The notes: generated from the sequence alone by a model not told the origin. A stretch of DNA of 64,000 nucleotides from IMGVR_UViG_3300025770_000870:62001-126000, one strand, 5' to 3'; positions 49,094-64,000 are shown, counted from the stretch's first letter. Made by a program: numbers and translations.

Positions 49094-51106
49094 TTATTTA
49101 TTATTGTTATTGAATTTCTCAAATTTAGCGATAATCTTTTTATTTGTATTATCGATAGTCATTAAGCTTTTCCTATCCGTTTTCATTCCTTTTCCAGCAC
49201 CGGCCCTAATAAATTCTTCTTTTGTTACTGTTGATGGTGTACCATCGTTATTAACTAATTGATATTCGAAATTTTCATTAGTATCTTGTCCTAATAACTT
49301 AACACCTTTGGTATCATAATCAACATCCTCTCCAGATCTAGCAGTATCTATCTTTTCTTTAAGAGCATTTACAAAATCTCTAGCTATCTTCTTTAATACA
49401 TCAACATATTTATCTGTATCATAAGCTATTTTCATCATAGCTTTATTATATTTTAATAGATTAAGACCAGCGATATTTGTAATTGATGGGTGACCTCCAC
49501 TATTTCTTATTACAATTTCCCATACTGGAATTTTGAGATTATTTAATAGTGTTTTTTGTTCGTAAGATAAATCTTTATGTAAAACATTCATAGCTTCTTC
49601 TAATCCATCTTCTTTAATATCAACATTAAGAATAGTTCTACCCTCTTTCTTAAATACACAATCAGAATAAAAAGCTTCTAAATCAGAATATTTAAATCCA
49701 ACACCTTCGTATGAATCACCTTCATCCTTCTTCATTTTTTTCCAATCTTGTGAATTTTCAAATTCATTCTTAATTGATTCTAATGATATATAATACTTAC
49801 TCATCATTGGTTCATACTTAGCTAATACTTCTTTAGAGATTTCTCCTAAGTTAATATCTTTAAGTATTTTCTCCTTAAATGGATTACAAGAAACTTGTAC
49901 AAGACCCATTGGCCAAACAATACAGATAAATTCCGCATCCGGGAAATTCTTAAATGGTGTATATCTATCATAAGAACCTGGTTTAATCATACTACCACCT
50001 CCATATTGCATAAGTATTTTATAATCTTCATCAATATGAATACCCTTTATAGAACTCTTACCATTGAGAGCTTTTCTTCCTAACCAAGTAACGCTATAAA
50101 CATTTTTCGGTTTATCTTCAATATAATTTTTATCAAATAATCTATCAACATACTTAACATACTCTTCGTTAGATATTCCTAGCTTCTTAGCTAATTCAAC
50201 ATCTTGAGAGGCTGGCATTCTGTGTATATTTTTTAGGATGCTTAATTCGGTTCTACCAATTTCCATAACATCACCACTTTCACTTTCAACGAATCCGTAA
50301 TCCTTCATTCTCTCGATATAGTTAGTAAGGTTTGTTTTTATTTCTTCTGGTGTTGCTAATCTACCAAGCTTATCGCTTGTTTTTGCATTATTAATATAAT
50401 GTCTAATATTGTTAAACATTGAGTATAAACTCGCAGTTGAGTCTAATAATAAACACTCAAGTATATTCTTATTTATGTGATCTCTTTTACCATCTAATGA
50501 TTTAACAGTTATTCTTTTATTCTTATAAGCTAATAATAATCTATTAACCACTAATCCCATCATAAATCTATTCTTTTGTGGTGTTTCTGCCTTTTCATAT
50601 TTGAATATAGAATTTTGAACATCTTCTGGCTTAATATTATTTCTCAAGAAATCTGCTGAATCAATTGTTTGAATCATTTTTATATCTTGTGCCGTGAATA
50701 TATCTGAATATGAAACTTCACCTGATATAATCTCAACATTTGATCTAGCTGATTTGAAATATGTTGATTCTGTGTCCTCAGCACCAACTTGTTTATCATG
50801 ATGATCCGATTGTATATGGAACATTGGTTTACCGTGTGCGAAATCAACTAAAACTTTTAATGTATCAGGTCTTCCGTTTTTAACAGCATACTCTAATCCA
50901 CCATATTGAATGATATGACAATCAACTGTTTCTATTTGATAGTAATTTTTTAAGAATACACTCATAGCTAATGCTGATGTTACTCCATCTAAATCTTTGT
51001 GAAAGTATATCTCACATTCTTTATATCCTTTAGTTATAGCTTTTATGTTTCTTAAACCTACTTCCTCGTTTACAAACTCAGTATATTTTTTCATATTATT
51101 TTTCAT
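49094..51106 (-). CDS. Leader-tagged DHH-family phosphoesterase with inserted wHTH-like segment
   Basis: MKKYTEFVNE; HKDLDGV.S, LVDF, SDHH, GGH; TAATATATA at 51134-51142. Confidence 0.8.
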   Translation of the reverse strand: MKNNMKKYTEFVNEEVGLRNIKAITKGYKECEIYFHKDLDGVTSALAMSVFLKNYYQIETVDCHIIQYGGLEYAVKNGRPDTLKVLVDFAHGKPMFHIQSDHHDKQVGAEDTESTYFKSARSNVEIISGEVSYSDIFTAQDIKMIQTIDSADFLRNNIKPEDVQNSIFKYEKAETPQKNRFMMGLVVNRLLLAYKNKRITVKSLDGKRDHINKNILECLLLDSTASLYSMFNNIRHYINNAKTSDKLGRLATPEEIKTNLTNYIERMKDYGFVESESGDVMEIGRTELSILKNIHRMPASQDVELAKKLGISNEEYVKYVDRLFDKNYIEDKPKNVYSVTWLGRKALNGKSSIKGIHIDEDYKILMQYGGGSMIKPGSYDRYTPFKNFPDAEFICIVWPMGLVQVSCNPFKEKILKDINLGEISKEVLAKYEPMMSKYYISLESIKNEFENSQDWKKMKKDEGDSYEGVGFKYSDLEAFYSDCVFKKEGRTILNVDIKEDGLEEAMNVLHKDLSYEQKTLLNNLKIPVWEIVIRNSGGHPSITNIAGLNLLKYNKAMMKIAYDTDKYVDVLKKIARDFVNALKEKIDTARSGEDVDYDTKGVKLLGQDTNENFEYQLVNNDGTPSTVTKEEFIRAGAGKGMKTDRKSLMTIDNTNKKIIAKFEKFNNNNK

Positions 51107-53171: not shown

Positions 53172-53561
53172 ATGGAATTCTTTTGTGTATATTGCAAGAC
53201 TCGCAAGAAGTTTGATAAGTTTGTTAAAGTTAACAAAATTAAAAATAAGTATATTGTTGATATACGAAGGATTGTTGATGAAGAAGAAGTCGATTTCACT
53301 GATGATAAGACTTACCTCAAAATATTAATCTTTAATAAAATTCAACAAGCAATAGATAAGAAAAAGGATATTTACTATATTCCAGATTTTGACAAAGACT
53401 TTGCAATCGAGAAATTATTAAACCTTAAAAAGATATTAGCCGAGAATAACTTCAATGTTCTCATTTTTTACAACGAATTCAGAAAGAATCCAGAAATAAT
53501 GGATGATGTTCTATCAAACCTTTCTAAATTTTCAAATTCGCAAATTATTCGCGATTATTAA
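53172..53561 (+). CDS. Hypothetical protein
   Basis: 129-aa ORF. Confidence 0.7.
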   Translation: MEFFCVYCKTRKKFDKFVKVNKIKNKYIVDIRRIVDEEEVDFTDDKTYLKILIFNKIQQAIDKKKDIYYIPDFDKDFAIEKLLNLKKILAENNFNVLIFYNEFRKNPEIMDDVLSNLSKFSNSQIIRDY

Positions 53562-53629
53562 ATAAATAAAGATGTATAATTATTAGTAGAGATTACTAAT
53601 AATTAATATATACTAAAAAGATATTATAT

Positions 53630-55450
53630 ATGGCAATATTAGGAGGATCACCACTAGGACTTATAGGTATTAAAAGTACCCCATCTAGAGATGGTATGTC
53701 AACTTTTAATGCTGGGAACTCTCGTAATGTTAATGTTAATAAATATAACACAGGTAAACCTAATGAGGGTAGTGCTAAAGGAGGAATGGTATCATTATTC
53801 AGTGGTGGTAATGTTGTAAAAGCGTGGGGTAATATTAAAGCTGCAGGGACCGAGATGGATTCAACTGGACTTACGGATAATTTCAAAGGAACTTCTAGAT
53901 CAACATTACACAACAATGATATTTATGATACTAGTGTGTTAAATTTAATAGAGAAATTATCAACTACTCCAGCAAGGCTAAGACCATCTGATTTTGCTTA
54001 TCTCAAAGATTTAGGTCGTTATCCAAATAATAGACTAATGATAGCTAGAAGATTTGGTGGAGCAATTGGTGATGATATTATCGGAAAATCTAGAAAGCCG
54101 GACGTACAGGCGCTGTTGATAACATGGAAACCAGAGGGTGAAGAATTTTTTGAAATTTCATTTAGTGAAGACTGGGAAGATGCTGCTGCTGATTTTACTG
54201 GTATAATAAATGAAATGGGTGAAGACTTCTTGGGTAAGAGTGTTGGTAGCGGTATGGGAGCTGCTTTGGGATCTATACCACTCCCTGGATTCACAGAAGG
54301 TTTACAAAGACAATTCATGAAAAATTTAGGGATATTTGATAAGCTCCCAACAAATTCTAAAGGTATCGAGATTTTACCAGCAGGTAACCCTAATATAATT
54401 AAAATGGCCAAGAAAAGGAAAACTATCAATGCTGCTGACAAGGGTAGTGGTTTGAAATGTAGCTTTGCGGTGAAAATGGTGTGTGAATATGAGCAGAAGT
54501 TTATTTCGGGTATAGATCCAACAATTGTTTGGCAGGATTTATTAGGCACTATGTTAAGGTTCGGTACTTCTAAAAAATCAAGTTATGGATTATCAAAAGA
54601 TTTTGTTAAAAAAGTAGGTGAATGGTCTACAGATCCAGGTAAAGCTGTCGCATTTATTGCTAAAAAACTTTCATCCGCGGTCAATGCAATCGCTGATGAA
54701 GTTTATGAATTAATTGCAGCCATGACAGAAGATAAAGATGATAAAGAGGATAGGTTAGAAGAAGAAGCTGCTGAAGCAGGTAATCTAGCTACGGCGTTCT
54801 TCAAAGGCTTACTCGCTGATATTAAGAGCTCAGTTGAATCAACTGTTCTTAAATATAAACATGATATAATGGGTGTTGCTAACGCATTATCTGGTATGCC
54901 GTCAACACCTTGGCATATAACAATTGGAAACCCATTAAGACCTATGTTTTGTTCAGGTGATATGTTAGTTGAGGACACCAGATTAATCGTTGGTGCGGAT
55001 TTAGCATTTAATGATCTACCATCTAAAATAAGAGTTGAGTTTACTCTGAAAAATTCTAGACCTTGGGGTTTAGGTGAAATAGCTAGTAAATTTAATACTG
55101 GTAATATACGTACTGTGAATACTATTAGGGATTTTTCATCATTAAAAGCTGGTCAAACTTTACACAACTCACCACTTGAGAATGTTCCAACTCCAAAGGC
55201 CGAACCAGTGGGATCAGGACCCGGGGTTTCTAATACAGCCGCTGGTGTTGATAATACCAATAGTGGAGTAACAACTGAAAACAAAGAAGTGGAAGTGGTT
55301 GTTCCTGAGGCTGGAAGTGGATCAGAACCTGAATCTGTTGTAACCGATGGAGAGACCACATCCCCTACTGAAGTACAAGTAGCCGCCGAAGCCGCTGCCG
55401 CCACAGCCGCCGCAGCCGCAGCACCAGAATCAGAAACACCTGCCCCATAA
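53630..55450 (+). CDS. Putative baseplate/tail structural protein
   Basis: PWHITIGNP..PMF...DLP...VEFTL pattern; precedes the gp53-like gene; TAATATATA at 53604-53612. Confidence 0.6.
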   Translation: MAILGGSPLGLIGIKSTPSRDGMSTFNAGNSRNVNVNKYNTGKPNEGSAKGGMVSLFSGGNVVKAWGNIKAAGTEMDSTGLTDNFKGTSRSTLHNNDIYDTSVLNLIEKLSTTPARLRPSDFAYLKDLGRYPNNRLMIARRFGGAIGDDIIGKSRKPDVQALLITWKPEGEEFFEISFSEDWEDAAADFTGIINEMGEDFLGKSVGSGMGAALGSIPLPGFTEGLQRQFMKNLGIFDKLPTNSKGIEILPAGNPNIIKMAKKRKTINAADKGSGLKCSFAVKMVCEYEQKFISGIDPTIVWQDLLGTMLRFGTSKKSSYGLSKDFVKKVGEWSTDPGKAVAFIAKKLSSAVNAIADEVYELIAAMTEDKDDKEDRLEEEAAEAGNLATAFFKGLLADIKSSVESTVLKYKHDIMGVANALSGMPSTPWHITIGNPLRPMFCSGDMLVEDTRLIVGADLAFNDLPSKIRVEFTLKNSRPWGLGEIASKFNTGNIRTVNTIRDFSSLKAGQTLHNSPLENVPTPKAEPVGSGPGVSNTAAGVDNTNSGVTTENKEVEVVVPEAGSGSEPESVVTDGETTSPTEVQVAAEAAAATAAAAAAPESETPAP

Positions 55451-55465
55451 AAATAATTAATATAA

Positions 55466-55993
55466 ATGAACTTTAAATCACTTGCTGAGTATATAGGAAT
55501 AAATAAGTATCGAGAATTAGGTGATAATGAAGATGTTTTTTATGATTTGTTTTCATCTACGTTTAAGTATAATCAACGTATAGTATTATCAGAATATAGA
55601 GTTCCTAAGGGGTTTGATATGAGATTAGATTTGGTGTTTCAGGAAATGTATAATTTAGAGCCTAATGAAGTTGGTAATTATTTAGAAGATATGGATGTTA
55701 TATACTTTATCAATAATATTGATAATCCACTTAATATAAAGGAAGGACTTGTATTAAAATATCCGCCCGATTTGGGTAACCTACGTGAGTTTAGAGTTCT
55801 TAATGTTGATGATGATATTAATCATAAAGATAGAGTGAAAGAGAAATTAGCATACCCTAATAAGTCAACTCGTAAAGATAAGTCTAGAGAAAATTTTGTC
55901 AAAAATGGGTATTCACTACCACCAGTAGTATTAGAAACACCCAGGCCACCAGTTTCAGTAAAAGATGGTAAATTCAATATTGGTGGACTTTGA
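55466..55993 (+). CDS. Baseplate wedge protein (T4 gp53/LysM-like)
   Basis: Y.V.....MRLDL....Y...INNIDNPLNIKEG..L.YP. Confidence 0.7.
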   Translation: MNFKSLAEYIGINKYRELGDNEDVFYDLFSSTFKYNQRIVLSEYRVPKGFDMRLDLVFQEMYNLEPNEVGNYLEDMDVIYFINNIDNPLNIKEGLVLKYPPDLGNLREFRVLNVDDDINHKDRVKEKLAYPNKSTRKDKSRENFVKNGYSLPPVVLETPRPPVSVKDGKFNIGGL

Positions 55994-56012
55994 TAAATTT
56001 TATAAATAGTTT

Positions 56013-58130
56013 ATGGCTAAAGAACCGGATGTATCAGTAAGAGTTAGAGCAATTAATACAAATCTAGATGAGAGGCACTCAGGGTTGGGTGATATAGAGG
56101 TTCGTGTTATTCATGAGGGTGGTAAAAAATATAAAGTCGCTTGGATTCCTAAGGGTGGATACGGATATGTTACGGAATTTAAAAAGAAAGGCAAATATGA
56201 ATTATACACTGCTGAAAACTTTATACATGCTGTGATTTATCAAGCAACTAAGATTAAACTTGGAGGAAATTCTTCTATCGTTGATGTTAATGATTATAAA
56301 TTATTTGGTGATGATCAATATTATGAGATAATACAAAATCCCTTTGAGCAAAATCCCCCATTGTATAGATCTTTTGGTAATGATCCATATTATTTAAATA
56401 ATCAAACTAAAGTCAGTATATTTTGGTTTATAGGTGATAAACAATCTATATCTAGATTGGAGTTTAGTAAAACTTATGCACAAACTGAAGCAGTTAACTC
56501 AGTTAATGCGGTAACTGGGAATTTCGAACTTCGGGCGACATTTGGAGGTACAGAGGGTGTGTGGTCAGGTGGTGCTCTTTGGAGTCTTCCTAATGGTCGA
56601 GAGAAATTACGAAATACCAGAGATACAAATGGTGAGGGTATATTTAGTGAGGGTAATACATATGATGACAAGGCTGCTTGGGGTCAAATTTATGGATTAT
56701 ATATTGAATCTGATAATACATATGAAGACCCGTTAAATATTATAGAATATAAGAAATGTGATATAAAGAAATATGTCTTGATAGAGCATAAAGAATCCGG
56801 TGAGAAATTCACACTTGAGGAGAATATGACAGATTTCGTGGGCCCCTTCACAGGAGAAATAGAAAAACAATATGGGTTTGAAATAGATGGGGAAATACTC
56901 GATGTGGAAATACTCGAGTCTATCTTGACTATTTGGAAAAAAAAGGTTGCTGATTATGATGCACTTGATGTTTGTTATAAGGACTATGGGAATACCAAAG
57001 GTAAGGATTTACCTAAACACTTTTCTTGTAATGAGGTTGAGTATAGAAGTCCTATACAAATAGAACCAAAAGAACCGGAACCTACACCAAACGAAGAATC
57101 TGTACAAACACAGGGCACACCAAAGATTAAACTGAGTGTTGTTTTACCGGAAGATTTCGAGTTGAAGGTTAAAGAAGATTTAGATGAGGTTAAAGTTTAT
57201 ATAGGTGATCCACCATCAGATGGTTTTGTTTTCCAGGATGATTTTGATAATCTAGAAGAGTTGGATCCTGAATATATGGAGTCTGATTTTGAAGGAAGTC
57301 AAGAGGTGATAAATACACCAGAAGAGGTTGAAGAAAATATGGAGGTTGCTAAAGTTGATAATACTGGACCTCCTTCCGCTGTAATATCAACTGGTGATTT
57401 TACGTGCTCTGAGCCCCGTCAATCATCCGATAGCACCTTTCAGAATAATAAAGTACCTTATTATTTCCAATATGATACTAGATGGAATTATGTCATATTT
57501 GGATTATCGAAGGAAAAACAGTTTATAGAGGATGAAATCTTACCAGCGCTTTCAAGAGGTTCTTCAGGTAAGCTATATACTGTTAATTTTAAAGGAAGTA
57601 GTTATAAGATACAATGTGATCATAGAAGTGGGGATAAAGGGTATTCCGGAATTGGAGGTGGTGGGTGTGGTCCTACTAGTTTGGCTATGGTTAGTAATTA
57701 CTGGGCAAAAAGGAATGGTAAAGGAGTTTATACATCCCCTGTAAAAACAGCAAAAATGATATGTGATCTAGCTATCAGTGCTCGACCTGGTCCACCATGT
57801 AGCGGTACTGCCATGCGTACAGTAGAAAAAAAATGTAATGACACACTATCTTCGTTATTCGGTTTTAAATTACGGAAAGTCAGTAAGGAGCAAGCGATTT
57901 CTAGAATTAAAAGTGGAAATCCAGTTATATGGCAATGTAGGCAAGGATCAGGTTACAACAAAACGGGTGGTAAGAAGAAGTATGGTGGTCATTATATGGT
58001 GATATCCGAATTTAGAGATGGTAAATTTTGGGTAAGTGATCCTGGTAATAAATCCAAAAAGGGTATTGTATATTTAGATTCCACGTTGAGTACTTGTAAA
58101 GGTTATTACTTTGAATGTTATAAGGCATAA
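56013..58130 (+). CDS. Virion-associated protein with C-terminal C39-like cysteine peptidase
   Basis: VPYYFQ.D.RW, GCGPTSLAM, GGHYMVI, VSDPG. Confidence 0.8.
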   Translation: MAKEPDVSVRVRAINTNLDERHSGLGDIEVRVIHEGGKKYKVAWIPKGGYGYVTEFKKKGKYELYTAENFIHAVIYQATKIKLGGNSSIVDVNDYKLFGDDQYYEIIQNPFEQNPPLYRSFGNDPYYLNNQTKVSIFWFIGDKQSISRLEFSKTYAQTEAVNSVNAVTGNFELRATFGGTEGVWSGGALWSLPNGREKLRNTRDTNGEGIFSEGNTYDDKAAWGQIYGLYIESDNTYEDPLNIIEYKKCDIKKYVLIEHKESGEKFTLEENMTDFVGPFTGEIEKQYGFEIDGEILDVEILESILTIWKKKVADYDALDVCYKDYGNTKGKDLPKHFSCNEVEYRSPIQIEPKEPEPTPNEESVQTQGTPKIKLSVVLPEDFELKVKEDLDEVKVYIGDPPSDGFVFQDDFDNLEELDPEYMESDFEGSQEVINTPEEVEENMEVAKVDNTGPPSAVISTGDFTCSEPRQSSDSTFQNNKVPYYFQYDTRWNYVIFGLSKEKQFIEDEILPALSRGSSGKLYTVNFKGSSYKIQCDHRSGDKGYSGIGGGGCGPTSLAMVSNYWAKRNGKGVYTSPVKTAKMICDLAISARPGPPCSGTAMRTVEKKCNDTLSSLFGFKLRKVSKEQAISRIKSGNPVIWQCRQGSGYNKTGGKKKYGGHYMVISEFRDGKFWVSDPGNKSKKGIVYLDSTLSTCKGYYFECYKA
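57225..57247. repeat. 23-bp perfect inverted repeat with 63248-63270
   Basis: TTTGTTTTCCAGGATGATTTTGA, encoding FVFQDDF in both hydrolase genes. Confidence 0.85.
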
Positions 58131-58225
58131 AATCTCACATTAGTTATTACGGAGATAACGAGTTCTATGATAGTTTATCAAACTAATCGAGTGGTTATTT
58201 AAGAACAAGAATACTATCAATATAA

Positions 58226-58444
58226 TTACCAAGTTCTGATAGAACTTAAAGGTGTATTTCCTGAGTTAGGAGCTGCATCTACAAGTACTAATAAATTAGA
58301 TAAAGCTAATTCATATGTTGTTCCGGTAGCGGATAAATTAACTTCCGGCATAATAGCAATGAATAATCCGGGATCGTTTCTTCCTGAAGTAGCAAGTCCG
58401 GATGGTTGATAATGTATGTTTATTAGATATGTAGGATTTACCAT
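58226..58444 (-). CDS. Small protein, tandem duplicate B
   Basis: MVNP.YLINI...MPEVNLSATG.TYELAL...PLSSIRTW. Confidence 0.75.
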   Translation of the reverse strand: MVNPTYLINIHYQPSGLATSGRNDPGLFIAIMPEVNLSATGTTYELALSNLLVLVDAAPNSGNTPLSSIRTW

Positions 58445-58465
58445 TTTAAGTATTTTTAATTATTT

Positions 58466-58720
58466 TTACCAAGTTCTGATAGAACTTAAAGGTCCATTTA
58501 CTGGGTTAGGAGCTGCATCCACAAGTATTAATAAATTATCTAAAGCTAATTCATATGTTGATCCAGTAGCGGATAAATTAACTTCCGGCATACCAGCAAC
58601 GAAACAAGCAGGTCCATATGTGTTTACTGATGATGTTACACCACCAACATTTACGAGTTGTTGTCCACTAAGATGAGATGGACTATAAGATATGTTTATT
58701 AGATATGAAGGATTTACCAT
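58466..58720 (-). CDS. Small protein, tandem duplicate A
   Basis: Near-identical to ORF 58226-58444; TAATATATA at 58742-58750. Confidence 0.75.
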   Translation of the reverse strand: MVNPSYLINISYSPSHLSGQQLVNVGGVTSSVNTYGPACFVAGMPEVNLSATGSTYELALDNLLILVDAAPNPVNGPLSSIRTW

Positions 58721-58758
58721 TTTAATTAGTATATTTTTAATTATATATTAATTTTCAA

Positions 58759-60303
58759 TTATATAAATTTATCGAAATCACTTTTTCTGATAAGTGTGTA
58801 TGTAAAGGTATCTTTATTTGTAACTTTTACTTGATTTTCACAATTATTCATAAACTGTTTAAATTGTCTAGATTTCTTAAATACCTGACAGCCTTTCGAC
58901 CAGTTATAAACATTATTAGAACTACCACCTTTACTAGATCTGTGTATATTTATACCAAATGATCCTTCTTCTGTACTAGCTTTGAAGTTATATGCTCCAT
59001 CTTTATCATTTCTGTGTACTATACTCTTGGCGTATTTTAGACATTTATGATCTTTTTTACCCTGGTGTAATCCTATCTTATATTGATCGATATATTGACC
59101 AAGTGCTAACACAGCAACATTTTTCGGTAACTTCTTAGTCTTCGGTATAAAACCTGGAGTTGTAGTTACATTATATTCCATCGATATCCATGTGTTATTC
59201 ACATTTTTAAAGAAAACATAAATAGTATCATCAAATTTATTCGAAACGGTTCCATCATCTTTAGTTCTAATACCAACTATATTCATCATACCAACTTGGT
59301 CATAAACCACATAACCCTTTGATTGCATAAACCTTACCCACTTATTTACTTCCTCATTAGATTCTGTTGATGTCAGATCTATTGGTGGATTTGTGTTTTC
59401 TGCTGGTACATCGTCCGGTTCTCCATCCGTTGCTGGTGCAACATAATCTTCATCATATTCTTGCTTAGGACCATCTAGAGGTTTGAAATCTTCATCAGTT
59501 TTAGCTGTCATATCATTTTCAATTCCTCCTACTTCTTCTGGACCCTTTGTTGAATCCCAAGCATCCCCTACTTGTGGATCATCTTGTCTTTCAGGGAAAG
59601 AGTGGCATCTAACAGCAGTTACTTTATTATTATCTACTATATTAACGTGATGTGATAGAAAGACCGGATCTCTCAAAGATTTATATTTTAATAGAACTGA
59701 TATCATTTCTGGATTTGGTACAACCGGAGCTCCCAAGTTTCCTAAATAAGGACCGGCTTTGCTACCCAATAGGTTATCCACAAACTCATCAAACCAATCC
59801 ATCCAATGATTACCTAATATAGCTTGTTGTGAAGCACCAGCATCCCCAATATTAACATCTCTATTATTATCTTTAAGATTTAAATCAATTGTATCTTCTG
59901 TTATATTAATATTATTATACTTATAGTCTATTTTAAGTCCTTCATCATCATTAACATAAATTTGTGTTTTGTGATCAAAAATCAAAGACTTCATCGATTT
60001 ATAATTATCACCATCTAAAGATTCTAACTTCTTTTCTAAATTTACATTGTAGTGATCTGAGAATATGAATTCTGGTTTATATTCATCACCTTGGTCAAAA
60101 ACAACAATTAAAACTTTACCCTTTTCTGGTACATTAAATTCATTACCATTTATATCTTTCCATGGTGTAGCCCAGGGTAAATCCTCTAGCTTCATTTCAT
60201 CAAAAATATCCATAACCCTAACTTTAACTCTCCCGAGTTTCTTAGGATCTGCATTGTCTTCGACAACACCTATATATGTTTTGTTAGCTTCTACTTTATT
60301 CAT
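58759..60303 (-). CDS. gp5/VgrG-like baseplate spike (OB-fold) with C-terminal peptidoglycan-active domain
   Basis: YIGVVEDN.DP.KLGRVKVRV..LPWA.P..VPEKG; C-terminal TT.PG...GINIH...WSKGCQV (L,D-transpeptidase-like His/Cys). Confidence 0.85.
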   Translation of the reverse strand: MNKVEANKTYIGVVEDNADPKKLGRVKVRVMDIFDEMKLEDLPWATPWKDINGNEFNVPEKGKVLIVVFDQGDEYKPEFIFSDHYNVNLEKKLESLDGDNYKSMKSLIFDHKTQIYVNDDEGLKIDYKYNNINITEDTIDLNLKDNNRDVNIGDAGASQQAILGNHWMDWFDEFVDNLLGSKAGPYLGNLGAPVVPNPEMISVLLKYKSLRDPVFLSHHVNIVDNNKVTAVRCHSFPERQDDPQVGDAWDSTKGPEEVGGIENDMTAKTDEDFKPLDGPKQEYDEDYVAPATDGEPDDVPAENTNPPIDLTSTESNEEVNKWVRFMQSKGYVVYDQVGMMNIVGIRTKDDGTVSNKFDDTIYVFFKNVNNTWISMEYNVTTTPGFIPKTKKLPKNVAVLALGQYIDQYKIGLHQGKKDHKCLKYAKSIVHRNDKDGAYNFKASTEEGSFGINIHRSSKGGSSNNVYNWSKGCQVFKKSRQFKQFMNNCENQVKVTNKDTFTYTLIRKSDFDKFI

Positions 60304-60310
60304 TATATTC

Positions 60311-62167
60311 TTATCTTCTTTGACCGCCATTAGAGAATCCACCACCAACTGCACCACCCAATGAGTCTCCTAAAAACCCAACTAAATCACCCCTTACATC
60401 ATAGAAAAATCTTTGTGACACATTACTACCAGCATTCAATAATGAACCTTGTTCTCCTGGGCCAAGCTCATATATATTTTTGGGTGGTGGTATCGTACCT
60501 CCCTGTAATGATATTGCTGCTTTATTTAATGTTCTGGCTAATAATTGTGCTTTTGTGTTTATAACACCTTGTAATTCTTTTTTAGCAGATGATACCAATC
60601 TATCCTTAGCTTTTTTTGCCGCAGCTTTAGCCTTTCCTTTAGATGCTTTCTTATCTCCTTCTAAACTTTCCCCATCACTCGGTGGATCATCAGCGGTTAG
60701 GACTTCAGGAGCCAGTATAATTTCTGTTGTTCCTAATTTATTTATACTTTTTAAAACAAATGGTGATTCAACACCATTTTCTCTTAACTTATTTTTACCA
60801 ACTGTGAAGAAATTTGGTATTGATGTGTCTCCAACTGATTGTGTTCCTCTTGCTCCTGGGTTACCAATTTTCCAAATAGCACCACTATCATAACCAACAT
60901 AGCTACCAAAACCATCACCGGTTGGTACAAACTTTTCAAATTTAACGGCTGAGTATTTATAATCAAATGTTACTGGTGTTGTGCCTTGCGCAGCAATACT
61001 ACCCATGTCTATCTGAGCTGGGTGAGGTAGTTGGTCAAAAAAGAATTGACATTCTCTTAGAGAATAAACATATCTAGATACATTATCCTTTATTATTTCT
61101 AAATTACCAGTCTCTACTGCTTTTCTAACCCTGTTAAAATTTCTACATTCCGAAACTACTATATCACAATTAAATCTCAATAGATTCTCAGGAATCATTC
61201 CCTTACCATTTGGTTTAGACCAATATAATAATTTATAAAGATGTGTTAAAGTACCAACACTCAAAGAAACATCTTCCAAAAAGTCTAATGTTATGACATC
61301 TTTTCTATAATCAGTAATATATTTTAATGTTCCTGGTTTATTACTCTCTACTAAGAAGTTTAGACCTGTTATTTTTTGTATATAATAACCCATATAAGCT
61401 TTTTTACCCAATTGAAAAATTGATTTCGAGTTATCAAAACTAGCTGAGTTTACACCACTATTACTCATTGTTGTTTGTTCTGGATCAATCCTTAATGTTC
61501 CTTTTGTTTTGAAAAATTTCAAAAATTGTTGCTTAAAATCCTCATATACTGGTATCCTAGCGGCCATTTCATTTATTCCCTTATATTGATTTAAAAAATC
61601 TATCACAGATCCGTTTAATAATGGTGATGATATACCATCAATTATTAAATCAAATCCATACATAACCGGATCATTATTTTCGAATGGTGTTGCTTTGAAT
61701 TGACTCAATCTTAAATCAGAAGCACCTTCTGAATTTTCAATTGGTGTTAACCCATCAATTATTTGTAAACCGTGTTTAAAATAATCCGTTTTATTATCAT
61801 CAAATATCATATAATGATCTCTCATGGAATAAGGGATATCTTCTAAATCTGCACTTGATTTCGGTAAATCTTTACTTTCGTTAAATCTATCCGTAGTATC
61901 TAAATCAATTAAACCATTTGGTGTTATTTTCTGACCTAACCAATCTTCATATTCATATTGTCCATATTTAATTTTAACAGCTTCTTGCTGCTTCCCAAAA
62001 ACAGACAATGATGGTTGTATCAAAACTGGTGGTAAGAATCCAGAAGTTTTTGAAAAATCGGGATTTACTAATGTTTGTGGCCAAGGATTACTCACAAAAG
62101 CAATAATACTTGATGCTGAGTTAGATATTTTCTCTTTTAAATCTGTGATTTTGTCGAATACTCCCAT
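60311..62167 (-). CDS. Putative tail/baseplate structural protein
   Basis: Upstream of the gp5-like gene; IPENLLRF motif; TAATATATA at 62175-62183. Confidence 0.55.
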   Translation of the reverse strand: MGVFDKITDLKEKISNSASSIIAFVSNPWPQTLVNPDFSKTSGFLPPVLIQPSLSVFGKQQEAVKIKYGQYEYEDWLGQKITPNGLIDLDTTDRFNESKDLPKSSADLEDIPYSMRDHYMIFDDNKTDYFKHGLQIIDGLTPIENSEGASDLRLSQFKATPFENNDPVMYGFDLIIDGISSPLLNGSVIDFLNQYKGINEMAARIPVYEDFKQQFLKFFKTKGTLRIDPEQTTMSNSGVNSASFDNSKSIFQLGKKAYMGYYIQKITGLNFLVESNKPGTLKYITDYRKDVITLDFLEDVSLSVGTLTHLYKLLYWSKPNGKGMIPENLLRFNCDIVVSECRNFNRVRKAVETGNLEIIKDNVSRYVYSLRECQFFFDQLPHPAQIDMGSIAAQGTTPVTFDYKYSAVKFEKFVPTGDGFGSYVGYDSGAIWKIGNPGARGTQSVGDTSIPNFFTVGKNKLRENGVESPFVLKSINKLGTTEIILAPEVLTADDPPSDGESLEGDKKASKGKAKAAAKKAKDRLVSSAKKELQGVINTKAQLLARTLNKAAISLQGGTIPPPKNIYELGPGEQGSLLNAGSNVSQRFFYDVRGDLVGFLGDSLGGAVGGGFSNGGQRR

Positions 62168-62226
62168 AATGATTTATATATTAAAAATATCCTACTCTAA
62201 TAGAAGTTTGTTGAAAATTAAGGTGA

Positions 62227-64000
62227 TTAAGCAGGGGCGTATTTACCAGTACCATTTTTTTCGGCTCTAACATCATTATAAGTAGCTAAAGCAGCTTCAC
62301 ACTTCTTTATTCTTTCACCAGCGTGATGTTTGTAATAGTCCCTATTGGATACTCCGTTTTTATAGATTGCATCAGGCTTCTTTAGTGGTCGGCCGACTGA
62401 ACCAGGAACCTCAAAGTCACATAAAATTGCTTCACAATAAGCACCTATTGTTTGTGTTGGCTTACCACCCTTTTGGTTGATAAAAGTACCATTCTTTATC
62501 AACTTAGCTGAATTACCAGATGGAATACCAGCGAACATTTTTTGAATTCTACCTCCTTTACCGGAGCTCTGAGTCAATTCAGATATTAAAAAGGCACATT
62601 GTGCCTCAAATAAATAAGGCACTGATTTCAAATATACTTCGAGTTTATTTAAAGTATCTCTTCCAATCTTAACAGTTCCGCCTCCATGTGGTCTTGGATC
62701 TGTATCAAGGAATCCATTCTTCAAAGCTGAAGTCTTAACTCCTTTGTTAGTTAGATACTCACCACAAAATTTCTCCATGTTATATCTCCTTGAATATGTC
62801 CATTGAGCTAAGCCGAGACCAGAGAATACTTGACATTTACCTTTCTTACACGTATAATGTTTTACTGATCCTTGTTTTGCGTTCTCTTTTGACCACCGTT
62901 TTGCACCCATCCCACCGGGTACTATGTAATTTGCTTGATTTTCAATATTCCAAAATTTAAAACTTGATTCTGCATCGATATTACCACAGATACCAGCTGC
63001 TTGGTCTTTTGTAAACCCGCCCTCCTTGATTAACAATTCCATCAAAATATAAATCGCCTGTCGTTTCGTTTGGTTGTTACTAGGTGATGCTGGTGTAGGA
63101 GGTTCACCAGTAGCTGGATCAGCGTCTGGATCATTGGATCCATTCTGTTCCCGCGCCTCATCCCGCTCCTCAGCTGCTTCTGCTTCTGCCTCCTCTTGAC
63201 CTAAGAATGCAGTTTCTCGGTACTCATCGTCCAATTCACCAAGTTGTTCAAAATCATCCTGGAAAACAAACCCACCGGGTTCGATTAGTGTTAATTTACC
63301 AATTTTTGAATCTACTATTATTGATAAAGAATCTTCATATGATTTGAGAGAATCGTTACTAGTTGTTCCGCCGCTTGCACTTCCACTTGATAAAGGAAGA
63401 AACACTCCCTCAATTTCAACATTGAATGTTATTATATTTTTTTTTGATTCTACATCACCGCTTTGTGAACCCGTAATTACAGGCGCGGGCTCTTCTACTT
63501 CTTCTTCTGGTAGTAATTTTATGGGGCTTTTATACTCTACTAATTCTCCTGAATAATATAAACCTTTTTCACTTTTAGCAGGTGTTGAATTAGCCGCCCC
63601 CAATCTACCACCACCTTCGGGGTTATATATGTTACAAGCCACACCATTACCAAATATTTTATTAGTGTTCCCATCCTTCGCTGGCCACCTACCGAGTGAT
63701 GTTTCCTGTGGATCTATCAACTCACATTGACCAACATTATAATTAGGTACTTTTTTATTCCAAGCAGATAGTATATCATTTATGATATCAACATCATCAA
63801 CATTACCAGTATATTTCTTTTCTTGCTTCTCTAATTTTGTTGTGGTAGATTTCCCAGTATCGTCATAAGTCGTTTCATATCCAACCTTAGTAGATAATTC
63901 TAATAAATTATCCTCTGTTATATAAAGAACAGATTCTTCGGTCTTCCATTGTGGATCAAAAGAAGGGTCACTAGGAGTCCGTATGGTTACCGACTTAATT
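62227..64000 (-). CDS. Virion-associated protein with C-terminal phage tail lysozyme (Phage_lysozyme2-like); 5' end outside window
   Basis: Frame stays open to base 64000; AAGICGNI.AES, GLAQWT..R, Q..FL..EL, FEVP. Confidence 0.85.
   Translation of the reverse strand, partial: IKSVTIRTPSDPSFDPQWKTEESVLYITEDNLLELSTKVGYETTYDDTGKSTTTKLEKQEKKYTGNVDDVDIINDILSAWNKKVPNYNVGQCELIDPQETSLGRWPAKDGNTNKIFGNGVACNIYNPEGGGRLGAANSTPAKSEKGLYYSGELVEYKSPIKLLPEEEVEEPAPVITGSQSGDVESKKNIITFNVEIEGVFLPLSSGSASGGTTSNDSLKSYEDSLSIIVDSKIGKLTLIEPGGFVFQDDFEQLGELDDEYRETAFLGQEEAEAEAAEERDEAREQNGSNDPDADPATGEPPTPASPSNNQTKRQAIYILMELLIKEGGFTKDQAAGICGNIDAESSFKFWNIENQANYIVPGGMGAKRWSKENAKQGSVKHYTCKKGKCQVFSGLGLAQWTYSRRYNMEKFCGEYLTNKGVKTSALKNGFLDTDPRPHGGGTVKIGRDTLNKLEVYLKSVPYLFEAQCAFLISELTQSSGKGGRIQKMFAGIPSGNSAKLIKNGTFINQKGGKPTQTIGAYCEAILCDFEVPGSVGRPLKKPDAIYKNGVSNRDYYKHHAGERIKKCEAALATYNDVRAEKNGTGKYAPA

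What the first reader, a model, noticed from the sequence alone, without database searches (positions are those of the whole stretch)
56013..64000. Two convergent virion hydrolases share an adaptor and an in-frame 23-bp inverted repeat flanking the gp5 spike: possible catalytic-domain swap
Seen: ORF 56013(+) and ORF >64000-62227(-) share GEILDVEILESILTIWKKKV.DY / GNVDDVDIINDILSAWNKKV.NY and GFVFQDDF..L.ELD.EY.E..F.G..E. They then diverge into a C39-like peptidase versus a tail lysozyme. At the shared motif, 57225-57247 and 63248-63270 are a perfect 23-bp inverted repeat, including GC-ending TTC and CAG codons. The gp5-like spike, with a third wall-active domain, lies between them. Inference: a polymorphic-effector architecture (constant loading module, variable enzyme). 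Recombination at the repeat would invert ~6 kb and exchange catalytic domains in frame, shufflon-style. No recombinase is visible in the window.
Basis: partly seen in the sequence, partly recalled or inferred. Interest (0 to 1): 0.7.

Follow-up and report, generated by a model that had tools for sequence, protein, structure and literature searches.

The report
Swappable wall-cutting enzymes on phage tail
Two tail-hub genes of a 242-kb marine phage join a common front part, through a very conserved acidic junction motif, to interchangeable cell-wall-cutting enzymes that related phages swap by recombination; the proposed flip-switch inversion between the two genes is not supported.

Summary
The perfect 23-bp inverted repeat is at 57225-57247 / 63248-63270. 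The two convergent ORFs share both peptide motifs, and their Pfam domains are Peptidase_C39_2 and Phage_lysozyme2. They are paralogs over the whole N-terminal ~430 aa.

The polymorphic-architecture idea is strongly supported. A profile of the N-module finds 264 cluster representatives. 155 full-length members carry 17 unrelated C-terminal types (VanY, C39_2, M15_4, CHAP-like, GH19, GH108, Phage_lysozyme2 and others). In relatives 93-96% identical in DNA, similarity stops within or just after the motif and resumes at the stop codon. The adaptor-plus-enzyme unit also sits on other scaffolds, including a protein that looks like a baseplate hub.

The shufflon idea is not supported:
- No serine or tyrosine recombinase was found in the 242-kb record.
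- All bridging contigs from seven metagenome runs, and two other assemblies, show the reference orientation.
- The swap traceable in a relative (L008) is a cassette replacement, not an inversion.
- Codon identity outside the seven invariant residues is at chance, so the repeat is a by-product of amino-acid conservation and AT-biased codons (P about 0.04).

What the motif does is unknown. Only assembled contigs were available, so rare inverted molecules are not excluded.

The parts
56013..58130 (+). Left gene, 705 aa: N-module, adaptor, acidic linker and a Peptidase_C39_2 domain
   Evidence: ORF; Pfam PF13529 at residues 531-677, E 5e-14; N-module profile residues 6-434, E 1.5e-112
56013..57017 (+). 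N-module core (residues 1-335). Fold confidently predicted in parts, with no recognisable structural relative
   Evidence: AF2 with a 90-sequence alignment gave pLDDT 75.7 and pTM 0.67. Foldseek found nothing at E<=0.001 in PDB or BFVD and nothing below E 0.04 in AFDB clusters; best VIA Z was 5.5 and best Atlas TM 0.28
57018..57305 (+). Adaptor (residues 336-431), the most conserved part of the family. It ends in the motif GFVFQDDFDNLEELDPEYMESDFEGSQE at 57222-57305
   Evidence: Alignment A4 has 70% mean column identity, against 29% for the whole N-module. Motif shown across 28 members
57225..57247 (+). Left arm of the perfect 23-bp inverted repeat (codons FVFQDDF plus GA)
57282..58223 (+). 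Exchangeable cassette: the end of the motif, the acidic linker, the C39_2 domain, the stop codon and the 3' spacer. A GH108 cassette replaces it in the 93%-identical relative L006
   Evidence: blastn of the window region against L006 gives 93% identity up to 57281, no similarity after that, then 97.6% from 58224. Base-level junction
58226..58444 (-). Small ORF, 72 aa, a tandem paralog of the next ORF. Position matches a spike-associated protein; function unknown
   Evidence: (repeat D1)
58466..58720 (-). Small ORF, 84 aa, present in one copy downstream of the gp5-like gene in five of the six relatives whose contigs cover that position (not detected in L024)
58759..60303 (-). gp5-like central spike protein: N-terminal OB domain, acidic linker and a C-terminal phrog_3000 domain with a weak Tlde1/YkuD-like signature. 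The probable start is the ATG at 60303, judged from relatives; the listed ORF starts at a GTG at 60357
   Evidence: PF04717 E 5e-8; phrog_430 and phrog_3000; weak match to T4 gp5 chains; PF10908 E 0.05; alignment A5
60311..62167 (-). 618-aa conserved protein. Language-model features resemble phage tail-tube-fold families, suggesting a tube initiator or hub component (a lead only)
   Evidence: Atlas feature score 0.91-0.93 with 178-190 shared features against Phage_TTP clusters; synteny
62227..64000 (-). Right gene, 786 aa, continuing to 64587 outside the window: a paralogous N-module, the adaptor end, an acidic linker and a Phage_lysozyme2 domain (about 62755-63045)
63190..63273 (-). Right copy of the motif, GFVFQDDFEQLGELDDEYRETAFLGQEE
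63248..63270 (-). Right arm of the perfect 23-bp inverted repeat
55466..55993 (+). 175-aa protein always encoded directly upstream of the left gene. Function unknown
   Evidence: synteny in all relatives examined; alignment A7; no Pfam or PHROG hit

Best explanation
The two convergent genes are paralogous virion (tail-hub) peptidoglycan hydrolases of a 242-kb, 30% GC marine jumbo phage. Its tail genes resemble those of the 635-kb uncultured phage LR745206. Each protein has four parts: a structural N-module of about 335 aa, a very conserved adaptor of about 95 aa ending in the acidic motif FVFQDDFxxLxELDxE[YF]xExxFxGxEE, a short acidic low-complexity linker, and a C-terminal wall-degrading domain. 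The part downstream of the motif is an exchangeable cassette. Related phages replace it by homologous recombination. The motif and adaptor coding sequence supply the upstream homology, and the next conserved gene supplies the downstream homology. A given scaffold therefore carries any of many unrelated hydrolases. Shown here: the domain architecture, the size and diversity of the family, the DNA breakpoints, the disagreement between N-module and C-terminal relationships, and the conserved gene neighbourhood. Inferred: that the proteins are built into the central hub next to the gp5-like spike and act on the wall during infection; that the motif works at the protein level, most likely as a docking or tethering element, or a processing site, shared by every cassette carrier; and that cassette turnover reflects adaptation to host wall chemistry or host inhibitors. 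The 23-bp inverted repeat follows from the two paralogs lying on opposite strands and keeping seven invariant residues in an AT-biased genome. It is not a dedicated inversion site.
For: Architecture. Family: 26 close relatives carry PF13529, PF05838, PF18013, PF02557, PF13539 or PF00182 at the C-terminus. The profile search finds 264 representatives, 230 of them at E<=1e-10. 155 full-length members fall into 17 C-terminal BLAST clusters (further Pfam labels). Recent swaps: window against L006 (93% DNA identity) has C39_2 against GH108. L004, L007 and L008 (95-96% identity) have GH19, GH108 and Phage_lysozyme2. The breakpoints lie in or within about 30 nt after the motif, and similarity resumes at the stop codon or the convergent small gene. 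Exchange runs both ways: 20 of 23 pairs with N-modules at least 80% identical have no C-terminal similarity, and 26 pairs have C-termini at least 70% identical with N-modules under 50% (for example P0004/P0061, 88% against 36%). On the N-module tree the C-terminal type changes 106 times, against 108 +/- 2.7 for shuffled labels and a minimum of 16. Other scaffolds: at the right locus the adaptor end and enzyme sit on an unrelated 232-aa N-part (L004), on the first ~110 aa of the p747 homolog (L005, L026), or at the C-terminus of the p747 homolog itself (L023). p747 resembles Mu gpP / P2 gpD-type baseplate hub proteins by language-model features, a weak lead. Neighbourhood: p606, p175 and the left gene on one strand, and the small ORF (undetected in L024), gp5-like gene, p618, right gene, p747 and helicase on the other, in L004, L005, L023, L024 and L026. 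Protein-level constraint: the motif is nearly invariant in proteins that are only 25-45% identical overall, while its synonymous sites are at chance in most pairs.
Against: There is no direct evidence that either protein is in the virion; no proteomics or structure exists. The N-module has no detectable structural or sequence relative of known role. Co-folding the adaptor with the gp5-like protein, p175 and p129 gave no answer (score 0.00), so no partner is identified; p618, p747 and p606 were not tried. The near-random association of N-module and C-terminal type is inflated by sampling. The library holds one representative per 50%-identity cluster, which collapses pairs sharing both parts. 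The codon TTC for the second Phe is shared by all six independent DNA copies examined, which amino-acid selection alone does not explain. Several cassette labels (CHAP-like, M15_3-like, GH19 in L024, M15_4 in L023) rest on Pfam matches below the curated thresholds.
Confidence: 0.8

Rival explanations
1. Shufflon-like switch. Recombination between the two 23-bp arms inverts about 6 kb within a genome or population and exchanges the C39 and lysozyme domains in frame, as a programmed source of variation.
For: The arms are perfect, in frame and inverted, and an exchange would keep both reading frames. The Phage_lysozyme2 cassette sits at the right locus here and at the left locus in L008 (67% DNA identity), so cassettes have moved between the two loci at some time. 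L005 also has a 20-nt identical inverted core.
Against: No serine or tyrosine recombinase in the 242-kb record. Seven metagenome runs and two other assemblies show only the reference arrangement at the junctions. In L008 the gene downstream of the transferred cassette is not inverted. Codon identity outside the seven invariant residues is at chance, and P is 0.037 for seven identical codons given the amino acids. The one inverted relative (L025) inverted the whole gp5-to-helicase block, and its near end is not at the motif.
Confidence: 0.04
2. The motif is a maturation cleavage site. A phage protease, for example the ClpP-like head maturation protease encoded about 5 kb away, cuts at the acidic x-E-x sites, and the hydrolase is released from its scaffold during assembly or infection, much as T4 gp5 is processed.
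For: The motif lies exactly at the scaffold/enzyme boundary in every carrier, whatever the scaffold or the enzyme. It has invariant Glu residues (E420, E423, E431). A ClpP-family head maturation protease gene lies nearby. In the first AF2 model (26 sequences) the region is low-confidence throughout; with 90 sequences it reaches only pLDDT 50-80 with a short helix.
Against: No cleavage data exist. The conserved block of about 28 residues, with aromatic residues at fixed spacing, is much longer than known phage protease sites (my own knowledge: T4 gp21 recognises L/I-x-E, phiKZ gp175 recognises S/A/G-x-E). That length suits a binding interface better. This reading is compatible with the main explanation and may hold alongside it.
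Confidence: 0.15
3. The conserved DNA, not the peptide, is the selected element: a recombination signal kept so that cassettes can be exchanged.
For: Breakpoints cluster in or just after the motif. TTC is used for the second Phe in all six DNA copies seen. The 70 codons upstream show excess synonymous identity between the window and L004 (42/51 against 25.5 expected, p 2e-6).
Against: In seven of eight pairs tested, including left against right within this genome, synonymous identity in the motif equals the codon-usage expectation. The excess in the window/L004 pair is as well explained by a recent recombination tract reaching into the adaptor. Breakpoints would fall at the last conserved block in any case.
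Confidence: 0.05
4. The proteins are not virion components but soluble lysis or accessory enzymes that happen to be encoded among the tail genes.
For: No virion evidence exists, and the N-module has no known structural homolog.
Against: They hold a fixed position between baseplate-type genes in all relatives examined. In L023 the cassette is fused directly to the p747 homolog, which has hub-like features, and in L005/L026 to that protein's N-terminal domain. PF18013 is a phage tail lysozyme family. A large non-enzymatic N-terminal part of 335-440 aa is, from my own knowledge, typical of virion-associated lysins and not of endolysins.
Confidence: 0.05

Closest known systems
Virion-associated peptidoglycan hydrolases / tail lysins (T4 gp5 lysozyme, phiKZ gp181, staphylococcal tail hydrolases)
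   Same: A wall-degrading domain is carried on a large structural tail or baseplate protein encoded beside the central spike. Modular build is a general property of these enzymes (reviews PMC6024856, PMC8310338).
   Different: Here two separate carriers flank a spike that has its own putative wall-active domain. The carriers' N-module has no known homolog. The enzyme part turns over among at least 17 types behind one invariant junction motif, which I did not find described for these enzymes.
Polymorphic toxin systems and 'evolved' T6SS spike proteins such as VgrG with C-terminal effector domains (Vibrio cholerae VgrG-3 carries a peptidoglycan hydrolase; my own knowledge)
   Same: A constant delivery or anchoring module, a sharp conserved junction, many unrelated C-terminal enzymatic domains exchanged by recombination, and attachment to hub or spike components of a contractile injection machine. 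The gp5-like C-terminus weakly resembles the T6SS effector domain Tlde1.
   Different: No immunity genes and no arrays of spare cassettes lie downstream. The payloads are phage entry enzymes, not inter-bacterial toxins. The junction motif is not one of the known pre-toxin, MIX or FIX markers, as no Pfam family matches it.
Modular tail fibres and tailspikes with a conserved N-terminal anchor and exchangeable C-terminal receptor-binding or depolymerase domains (T7-like gp17, Klebsiella phage depolymerases; my own knowledge)
   Same: Homologous recombination at a conserved anchor or linker swaps the functional C-terminal module between related phages.
   Different: The module exchanged here is a peptidoglycan hydrolase at the hub, not a receptor-binding protein. 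It would not be expected to set adsorption specificity.
Shufflons and invertible tail-fibre segments (R64 Rci shufflon; Mu Gin, P1 Cin; my own knowledge)
   Same: In-frame inverted repeats lie inside two convergent genes with a constant N-terminal and a variable C-terminal part.
   Different: No recombinase gene, no second orientation seen, and no DNA-level conservation of the repeat beyond what the amino acids impose.

Membership tests
Shufflon / site-specific invertible segment | A dedicated serine (Hin/Gin/Cin) or tyrosine (Rci) recombinase encoded with the segment | tested here: not met
   No PF00239 or PF00589 match at E<=0.01 in the whole 241,918-bp record; the positive controls matched. 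The record is 89% complete by CheckV.
Shufflon / site-specific invertible segment | Inverted repeats bounding the invertible DNA | tested here: met
   Perfect 23-bp arms at 57225-57247 and 63248-63270
Shufflon / site-specific invertible segment | Both orientations present in a population | tested here: inconclusive
   Only the reference orientation was seen in bridging contigs of 7 runs and in 2 other assemblies. All runs are held as assembled contigs, which drop rare variants, and no raw reads were available.
Shufflon / site-specific invertible segment | The repeat is conserved as DNA (a recombinase site), beyond the coding constraint | tested here: not met
   Left against right: 9/18 identical codons in the motif against 10.6 expected. 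Identity drops immediately outside the 7 invariant residues.
Polymorphic effector / toxin architecture | A conserved N-terminal module joined to many unrelated C-terminal enzymatic domains | tested here: met
   17 C-terminal clusters on one N-module family, with 6 Pfam families above threshold
Polymorphic effector / toxin architecture | Recombinational exchange with a sharp breakpoint at a conserved junction | tested here: met
   DNA breakpoints at or just after the motif in backgrounds 93-96% identical; C-terminal identity far above N-module identity in 26 pairs
Polymorphic effector / toxin architecture | Cognate immunity genes and/or silent spare cassettes downstream | tested here: not met
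   Only a 95-nt spacer and then the convergent small gene follow the left gene; the right gene abuts p618. There are only two adaptor copies in the genome.
Virion-associated peptidoglycan hydrolase | A recognisable peptidoglycan-degrading catalytic domain | tested here: met
   PF13529 E 5e-14 and PF18013 E 3e-12, both above the curated cut-offs. Activity itself was not tested.
Virion-associated peptidoglycan hydrolase | Encoded within the tail or baseplate module | tested here: met
   Flanks the gp5-like spike gene (PF04717). Synteny is conserved in six relatives. Cassette carriers are fused to p747, which has hub-like features.
Virion-associated peptidoglycan hydrolase | Physically present in the virion | not testable with these tools
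   This is an uncultured phage, and no proteome or structure exists.
T4 gp5-type spike lysozyme | OB domain, lysozyme domain and C-terminal beta-helix in one chain | tested here: not met
   The gp5-like ORF has the OB domain and a weak N-terminal match to T4 gp5. It has no lysozyme domain. Its C-terminus is phrog_3000 with a weak Tlde1-like signal. The lysozyme sits on a separate protein.

The most novel reading that the evidence does not exclude
The acidic FVFQDDF...ELDxEYxExxFxGxEE block is a universal loading or tether signal. Through it any wall-degrading enzyme is docked to the central hub of this lineage of jumbo and huge phages, whatever scaffold carries it. The fast turnover of at least 17 enzyme types at two loci per genome would then be the phage side of an arms race over entry, against host peptidoglycan modifications or periplasmic hydrolase inhibitors and immunity proteins. 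This would be a phage counterpart of polymorphic T6SS effectors. Most genomes examined pair enzymes of different bond specificity.
Probability: 0.3. Interest if true: 0.75.

Novelty: new variant of a known kind. Interest (0 to 1): 0.55.

Why it matters
Modular virion lysins are known. This family adds three things:
- A large, uncharacterised N-terminal module with no detectable structural relative.
- One nearly invariant junction peptide shared by carriers with different scaffolds.
- Unusually rapid, well-delimited exchange of the catalytic domain between near-identical phages.

If the enzymes are hub-mounted, wall penetration, and not only receptor binding, would be under diversifying selection in abundant marine jumbo phages. 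That makes a testable link to host wall chemistry and to hydrolase inhibitors.

The natural junction also marks where evolution joins unrelated hydrolases to a common carrier. This is useful knowledge for understanding, and for ordinary laboratory study of, phage lysin modularity.

The result also corrects an attractive but unsupported reading of an in-frame inverted repeat as a DNA switch.

Tried and rejected
- **PHROGs, left gene:** no hit. The right gene gave only a marginal tape-measure hit.
- **Phage GenBank collection (tblastn):** the only relative is LR745206.1.
- **IMG/VR scans:** they returned only the same phage, and the degenerate DNA pattern for the motif returned chance hits.
- **JGI metagenome scan:** The adaptor alignment found only 4 loci.
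- **First AF2 model (26 sequences):** poor, pLDDT 55. Its Foldseek search was uninformative.
- **Better AF2 model (90 sequences, pLDDT 75.7):** still no fold relative in PDB, BFVD, AFDB clusters or the ESM Atlas, nor by VIA-align, where the best Z of 5.5 is background level.
- **Profile search of solved structures:** only an insignificant hit, E 0.5.
- **Atlas feature search of the N-module:** nothing above 0.7.
- **Co-folding:** The run with window sequences only (gp5-like, p175, p129 and the adaptor) returned 'no answer', score 0.00, which is evidence neither way.
- **Promoter and terminator scan of 55300-64000:** no more sites than in shuffles.
- **Loose end at 57221 in runs X5 and X8:** considered as a possible hybrid junction. 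It carries the right gene's upstream sequence. The extra depth is confined to one 197-nt bin; in X8 it corresponds to about 27 nt at the main contig's depth. The likeliest reading is a contig of the right arm aligning locally to the left arm.
- **Similar motif in the gp5-like linker (DEDFKPLDGPKQEYDEDY):** considered, but the spacing differs and the C-terminus is not polymorphic in relatives. Left as a resemblance only.

Full report
**1. What is in the sequence**

The window is bases 62001-126000 of a single 241,918-bp contig with 29.9% G+C. It is a virus record rated 89% complete. The sequence turns up in many marine and seawater metagenomes.

- The left ORF (56013-58130, +, 705 aa) ends in a Peptidase_C39_2 domain (PF13529, residues 531-677, E 5e-14).
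- The right ORF lies on the minus strand, ends at 62227 and runs off the window. In the genome it is 786 aa (window 62227-64587) and carries Phage_lysozyme2 (PF18013, E 3e-12).
- Between them lie two tandem small ORFs, a gp5-like spike gene (PF04717 OB domain; phrog_430 'baseplate hub subunit and tail lysozyme' over the N-terminus; phrog_3000 over the C-terminus) and a 618-aa gene.
- The exact 23-mer occurs only at 57225-57247 (+) and 63248-63270 (-), with none expected by chance. It is the core of a 54-nt, 78% inverted repeat.

The two proteins align along the whole N-terminal ~430 aa with several further conserved blocks, so they are paralogs and not merely carriers of two shared motifs.

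**2. Is the DNA repeat special?**

The 23 bp encode FVFQDDF plus two bases. With the genome's own codon usage, the chance that seven identical residues use seven identical codons is 0.037. Just outside this core, identical residues use different codons (D GAT/GAC, E GAA/GAG, Y TAT/TAC, F TTT/TTC, L CTA/CTT).

- Over the 28-residue motif, 9 of 18 identical residues share a codon, against 10.6 expected.
- Over the rest of the N-module the figures are 52 of 100 against 52.5.

There is thus no trace of gene conversion between the two copies, and no selection for DNA identity. The repeat is what two diverged paralogs on opposite strands give when seven residues are invariant in an AT-biased genome.

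One detail is unexplained. All six independent DNA copies examined use the rarer TTC for the second Phe.

**3. Test of the inversion**

All public runs holding this DNA are kept as assembled contigs, so only dominant forms can be seen.

- Contigs bridge the left junction in the reference arrangement in four runs from different studies (X5, X8, X9, X10).
- Contigs bridge the right junction in three further runs (X12, X14, X15).
- A loose end at 57221 in X5 and X8 carries the right gene's upstream sequence. The added depth is confined to a single 197-nt bin; in X8 it amounts to about 27 nt at the main contig's depth. The likeliest reading is a contig of the right arm aligning locally to the left arm, not a hybrid molecule.
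- Two IMG/VR assemblies from other samples are collinear over 12 kb.
- The whole record has no serine or tyrosine recombinase.

Among relatives, the order p606-p175-left gene (+) / small ORF (undetected in L024)-gp5-like-p618-right gene-p747-helicase (-) is kept in L004, L005, L023, L024 and L026, which is LR745206.1. The one exception, L025, has inverted the entire gp5-to-helicase block, including the complete right-locus gene. The near end of that inversion lies outside the motif.

**4. The polymorphic family**

A word-indexed search with the N-module found 26 relatives whose C-termini carry PF13529, PF05838 (GH108), PF18013, PF02557 (VanY), PF13539 (M15_4) or PF00182 (GH19). A profile search of 1.84 billion cluster representatives found 264 members, 230 of them at E<=1e-10.

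I cut 155 full-length members at the end of the profile match. Their C-termini fall into 17 BLAST clusters:

| C-terminal cluster | Members |
|---|---|
| VanY | 33 |
| C39_2 | 25 |
| M15_4-like | 17 |
| CHAP/NlpC-like (weak), two clusters | 16 + 16 |
| M15_3-like (weak) | 14 |
| Unassigned | 11 |
| GH19 | 5 |
| GH108 | 4 |
| Phage_lysozyme2 | 4 |
| Second M15_4 cluster | 4 |
| Singletons | 6 |

Every assignable type acts on peptidoglycan.

**5. Evidence for recombinational exchange**

DNA comparisons give sharp cassettes.

- The window and L006 are 93% identical from 53300 to 57281, which is inside codons EY|ME of the motif. They are unrelated through the enzyme domain (C39_2 against GH108) and 97.6% identical again from 58224, at the stop codon of the convergent small gene.
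- L004, L007 and L008 are 95-96% identical up to ...F[T/A]G[D/E]EE. They then carry GH19, GH108 and Phage_lysozyme2, and similarity resumes at the stop codon.
- In L008 the small gene downstream keeps its usual orientation, so this lysozyme2 cassette arrived by replacement and not by inversion.

Exchange runs in both directions. 20 of 23 pairs with N-modules at least 80% identical have no C-terminal similarity. 26 pairs have C-termini at least 70% identical on N-modules under 50% identical.

On a FastTree of the N-modules the C-terminal type changes 106 times, against 108 +/- 2.7 for shuffled labels and a minimum of 16. This figure is inflated because the library keeps one representative per 50%-identity cluster.

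**6. The adaptor is the constant unit**

The last ~95 aa of the N-module (C..IEYKSPI...PTEES.Q.Q..KIKLSVVLPEDLELKVKEDLN.LKVYIGDPP....FVFQDDFDNLEELDPE[YF].ES.F.G.EE) have 70% mean column identity, against 29% for the module as a whole.

At the right locus the end of this adaptor, with an enzyme behind it, sits on different scaffolds:

| Locus | Scaffold at the right locus | Enzyme behind the adaptor |
|---|---|---|
| This window | N-module paralog | Phage_lysozyme2 |
| L004 | Unrelated 232-aa N-part | VanY |
| L005, L026 | First ~110 aa of the p747 homolog; the rest of p747 is a separate gene | CHAP/Amidase_6-like (weak; scanned in L005 only) |
| L023 | C-terminus of the p747 homolog itself | M15_4-like (weak) |
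| L024 | 138-aa N-part | GH19-like (weak) |
| L025 | ~500-aa N-part | Unassigned domain, behind a degenerate motif DVFDTVEGLDEEYKETGYGETEEE |

By language-model features p747 resembles Mu gpP / P2 gpD / XkdQ-type baseplate hub proteins (score 0.88, a weak lead). p618 resembles tail-tube-fold families (0.91-0.93 with 178-190 shared features). Together with the gp5-like spike, this places the cassette carriers at the central hub by inference.

Synonymous sites in the motif are at chance in seven of eight lineage pairs. The 70 codons upstream show an excess between the window and L004 (42/51 against 25.5 expected, p 2e-6), which fits a recombination tract reaching into the adaptor. The constraint on the motif is therefore on the protein.

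**7. What the N-module and the motif are**

- With 90 sequences AF2 gives a usable model (pLDDT 75.7, pTM 0.67). The motif region is of middling confidence, with a short helix.
- Foldseek found nothing at E<=0.001 in PDB or BFVD and nothing below E 0.04 in AFDB clusters. VIA-align found no Z above 5.5. The Atlas found no TM above 0.28.
- Sequence profiles find no solved relative.
- A co-fold of the adaptor with the gp5-like protein, p175 and p129 gave no answer.

The fold and the partner remain unknown. I favour a docking or tether role for the motif because it is long, has fixed aromatic spacing, and is shared by carriers with unrelated scaffolds and unrelated enzymes. A processing site is the main alternative, and the two are not exclusive.

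**8. Comparison with known systems and verdict**

The system works like a virion-associated lysin built on the plan of polymorphic effectors or 'evolved' VgrG spikes: constant carrier, conserved junction, variable enzyme. It exchanges modules in the way tail-fibre and tailspike genes do.

It fails the tests for a shufflon: no recombinase, no second orientation, no DNA-level site. It also lacks the immunity genes and spare cassettes of classical polymorphic toxin loci.

Literature searches found general accounts of modular virion lysins (PMC6024856, PMC8310338) and the description of LR745206 as a huge phage (PMC9723777). I found no description of this family or motif.

I rate it a new variant of a known kind, of moderate to good interest. 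The inverted repeat itself is ordinary.

Noticed in passing
window 58226-58444 and 58466-58720 (-): Two tandem paralogous small ORFs (72 and 84 aa, 64% identical; 143-nt direct repeat at 90%), both ending ...PLSSIRTW, lie directly downstream of the gp5-like gene. Five of six relatives have a single copy (none detected in L024). The position matches that of a spike-tip protein, but neither has a Pfam or PHROG hit.
   Followed up: partly
window 58762-59340 (-), C-terminus of the gp5-like protein; L005 11934-13457, L026 11875-13398, L024 4361-6271: The C-terminal domain (phrog_3000) has an H-x18-C / SxGC pattern and a weak Tlde1_dom match (E 0.05), suggesting an L,D-transpeptidase-fold enzyme. 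In L005 and L026 the His and Cys are replaced (I and S), and in L024 the Cys is replaced by Ala. The spike's own enzyme may be inactive in some relatives.
   Followed up: partly
L025 6610-16542: In this more distant relative the whole block helicase-p747-right gene-p618-gp5-like gene is inverted, so both adaptor genes lie on the same strand. The helicase gene appears split into two ORFs (251 and 217 aa).
   Followed up: partly
window 53172-53561 (+): The 129-aa protein heading the p129-p606-p175-left gene operon is very highly conserved (84-93% identity where its neighbours are at 45-70%). It starts MEFFCVYCK (a CxxC pair) and has no family hit.
   Followed up: no
L001 14626-16869 (window 64626-66869, -); L005 15413-18506; L023 15297-17762: The p747 protein, which has hub-like features, is one gene here. 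It is split after about 110-150 aa in L005 and L026, with the adaptor and enzyme attached to the first piece. In L023 it is fused at its C-terminus to the adaptor and enzyme. Gene fission and fusion thus occur around the same junction motif.
   Followed up: partly
left and right loci of the window, L004, L005, L023, L024, L026: In four of six genomes the two loci pair a glycosidase-type cassette with a peptidase or amidase-type cassette (C39_2 + lysozyme2; GH19 + VanY; GH108 + CHAP-like; CHAP-like + GH19). L023 pairs two peptidase types, and L026 probably does as well, judging by the likeness of its right gene to that of L005. The sample is too small for a test.
   Followed up: no
window 55385-55427 (3' end of p606, Ala/Glu/Pro-rich tail): This low-complexity stretch attracts many short, high-depth contigs from other sources. 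One run (X9) has a 21-nt in-frame insertion after 55417.
   Followed up: no
window 59846-59878: A 33-nt stretch inside the gp5-like gene is matched by very high-depth contigs (up to about 410x) that continue into unrelated sequence on both sides in five runs. This is probably a chance or conserved short match to an abundant organism.
   Followed up: no
IMG/VR contigs behind L002 and L020 (483,262 and 492,776 bp) compared with this 241,918-bp record: The identical region occurs in contigs about twice the length of this record. They may be concatemeric or duplicated assemblies of the same phage, or this record may be partial (CheckV 89%).
   Followed up: no
window 49094-51106 (-): The 670-aa protein upstream of the cluster has weak DHH and winged-helix hits, so it is probably a nuclease or phosphoesterase and not a tail sheath. 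The recognisable tail-hub module seems to start at p129.
   Followed up: no
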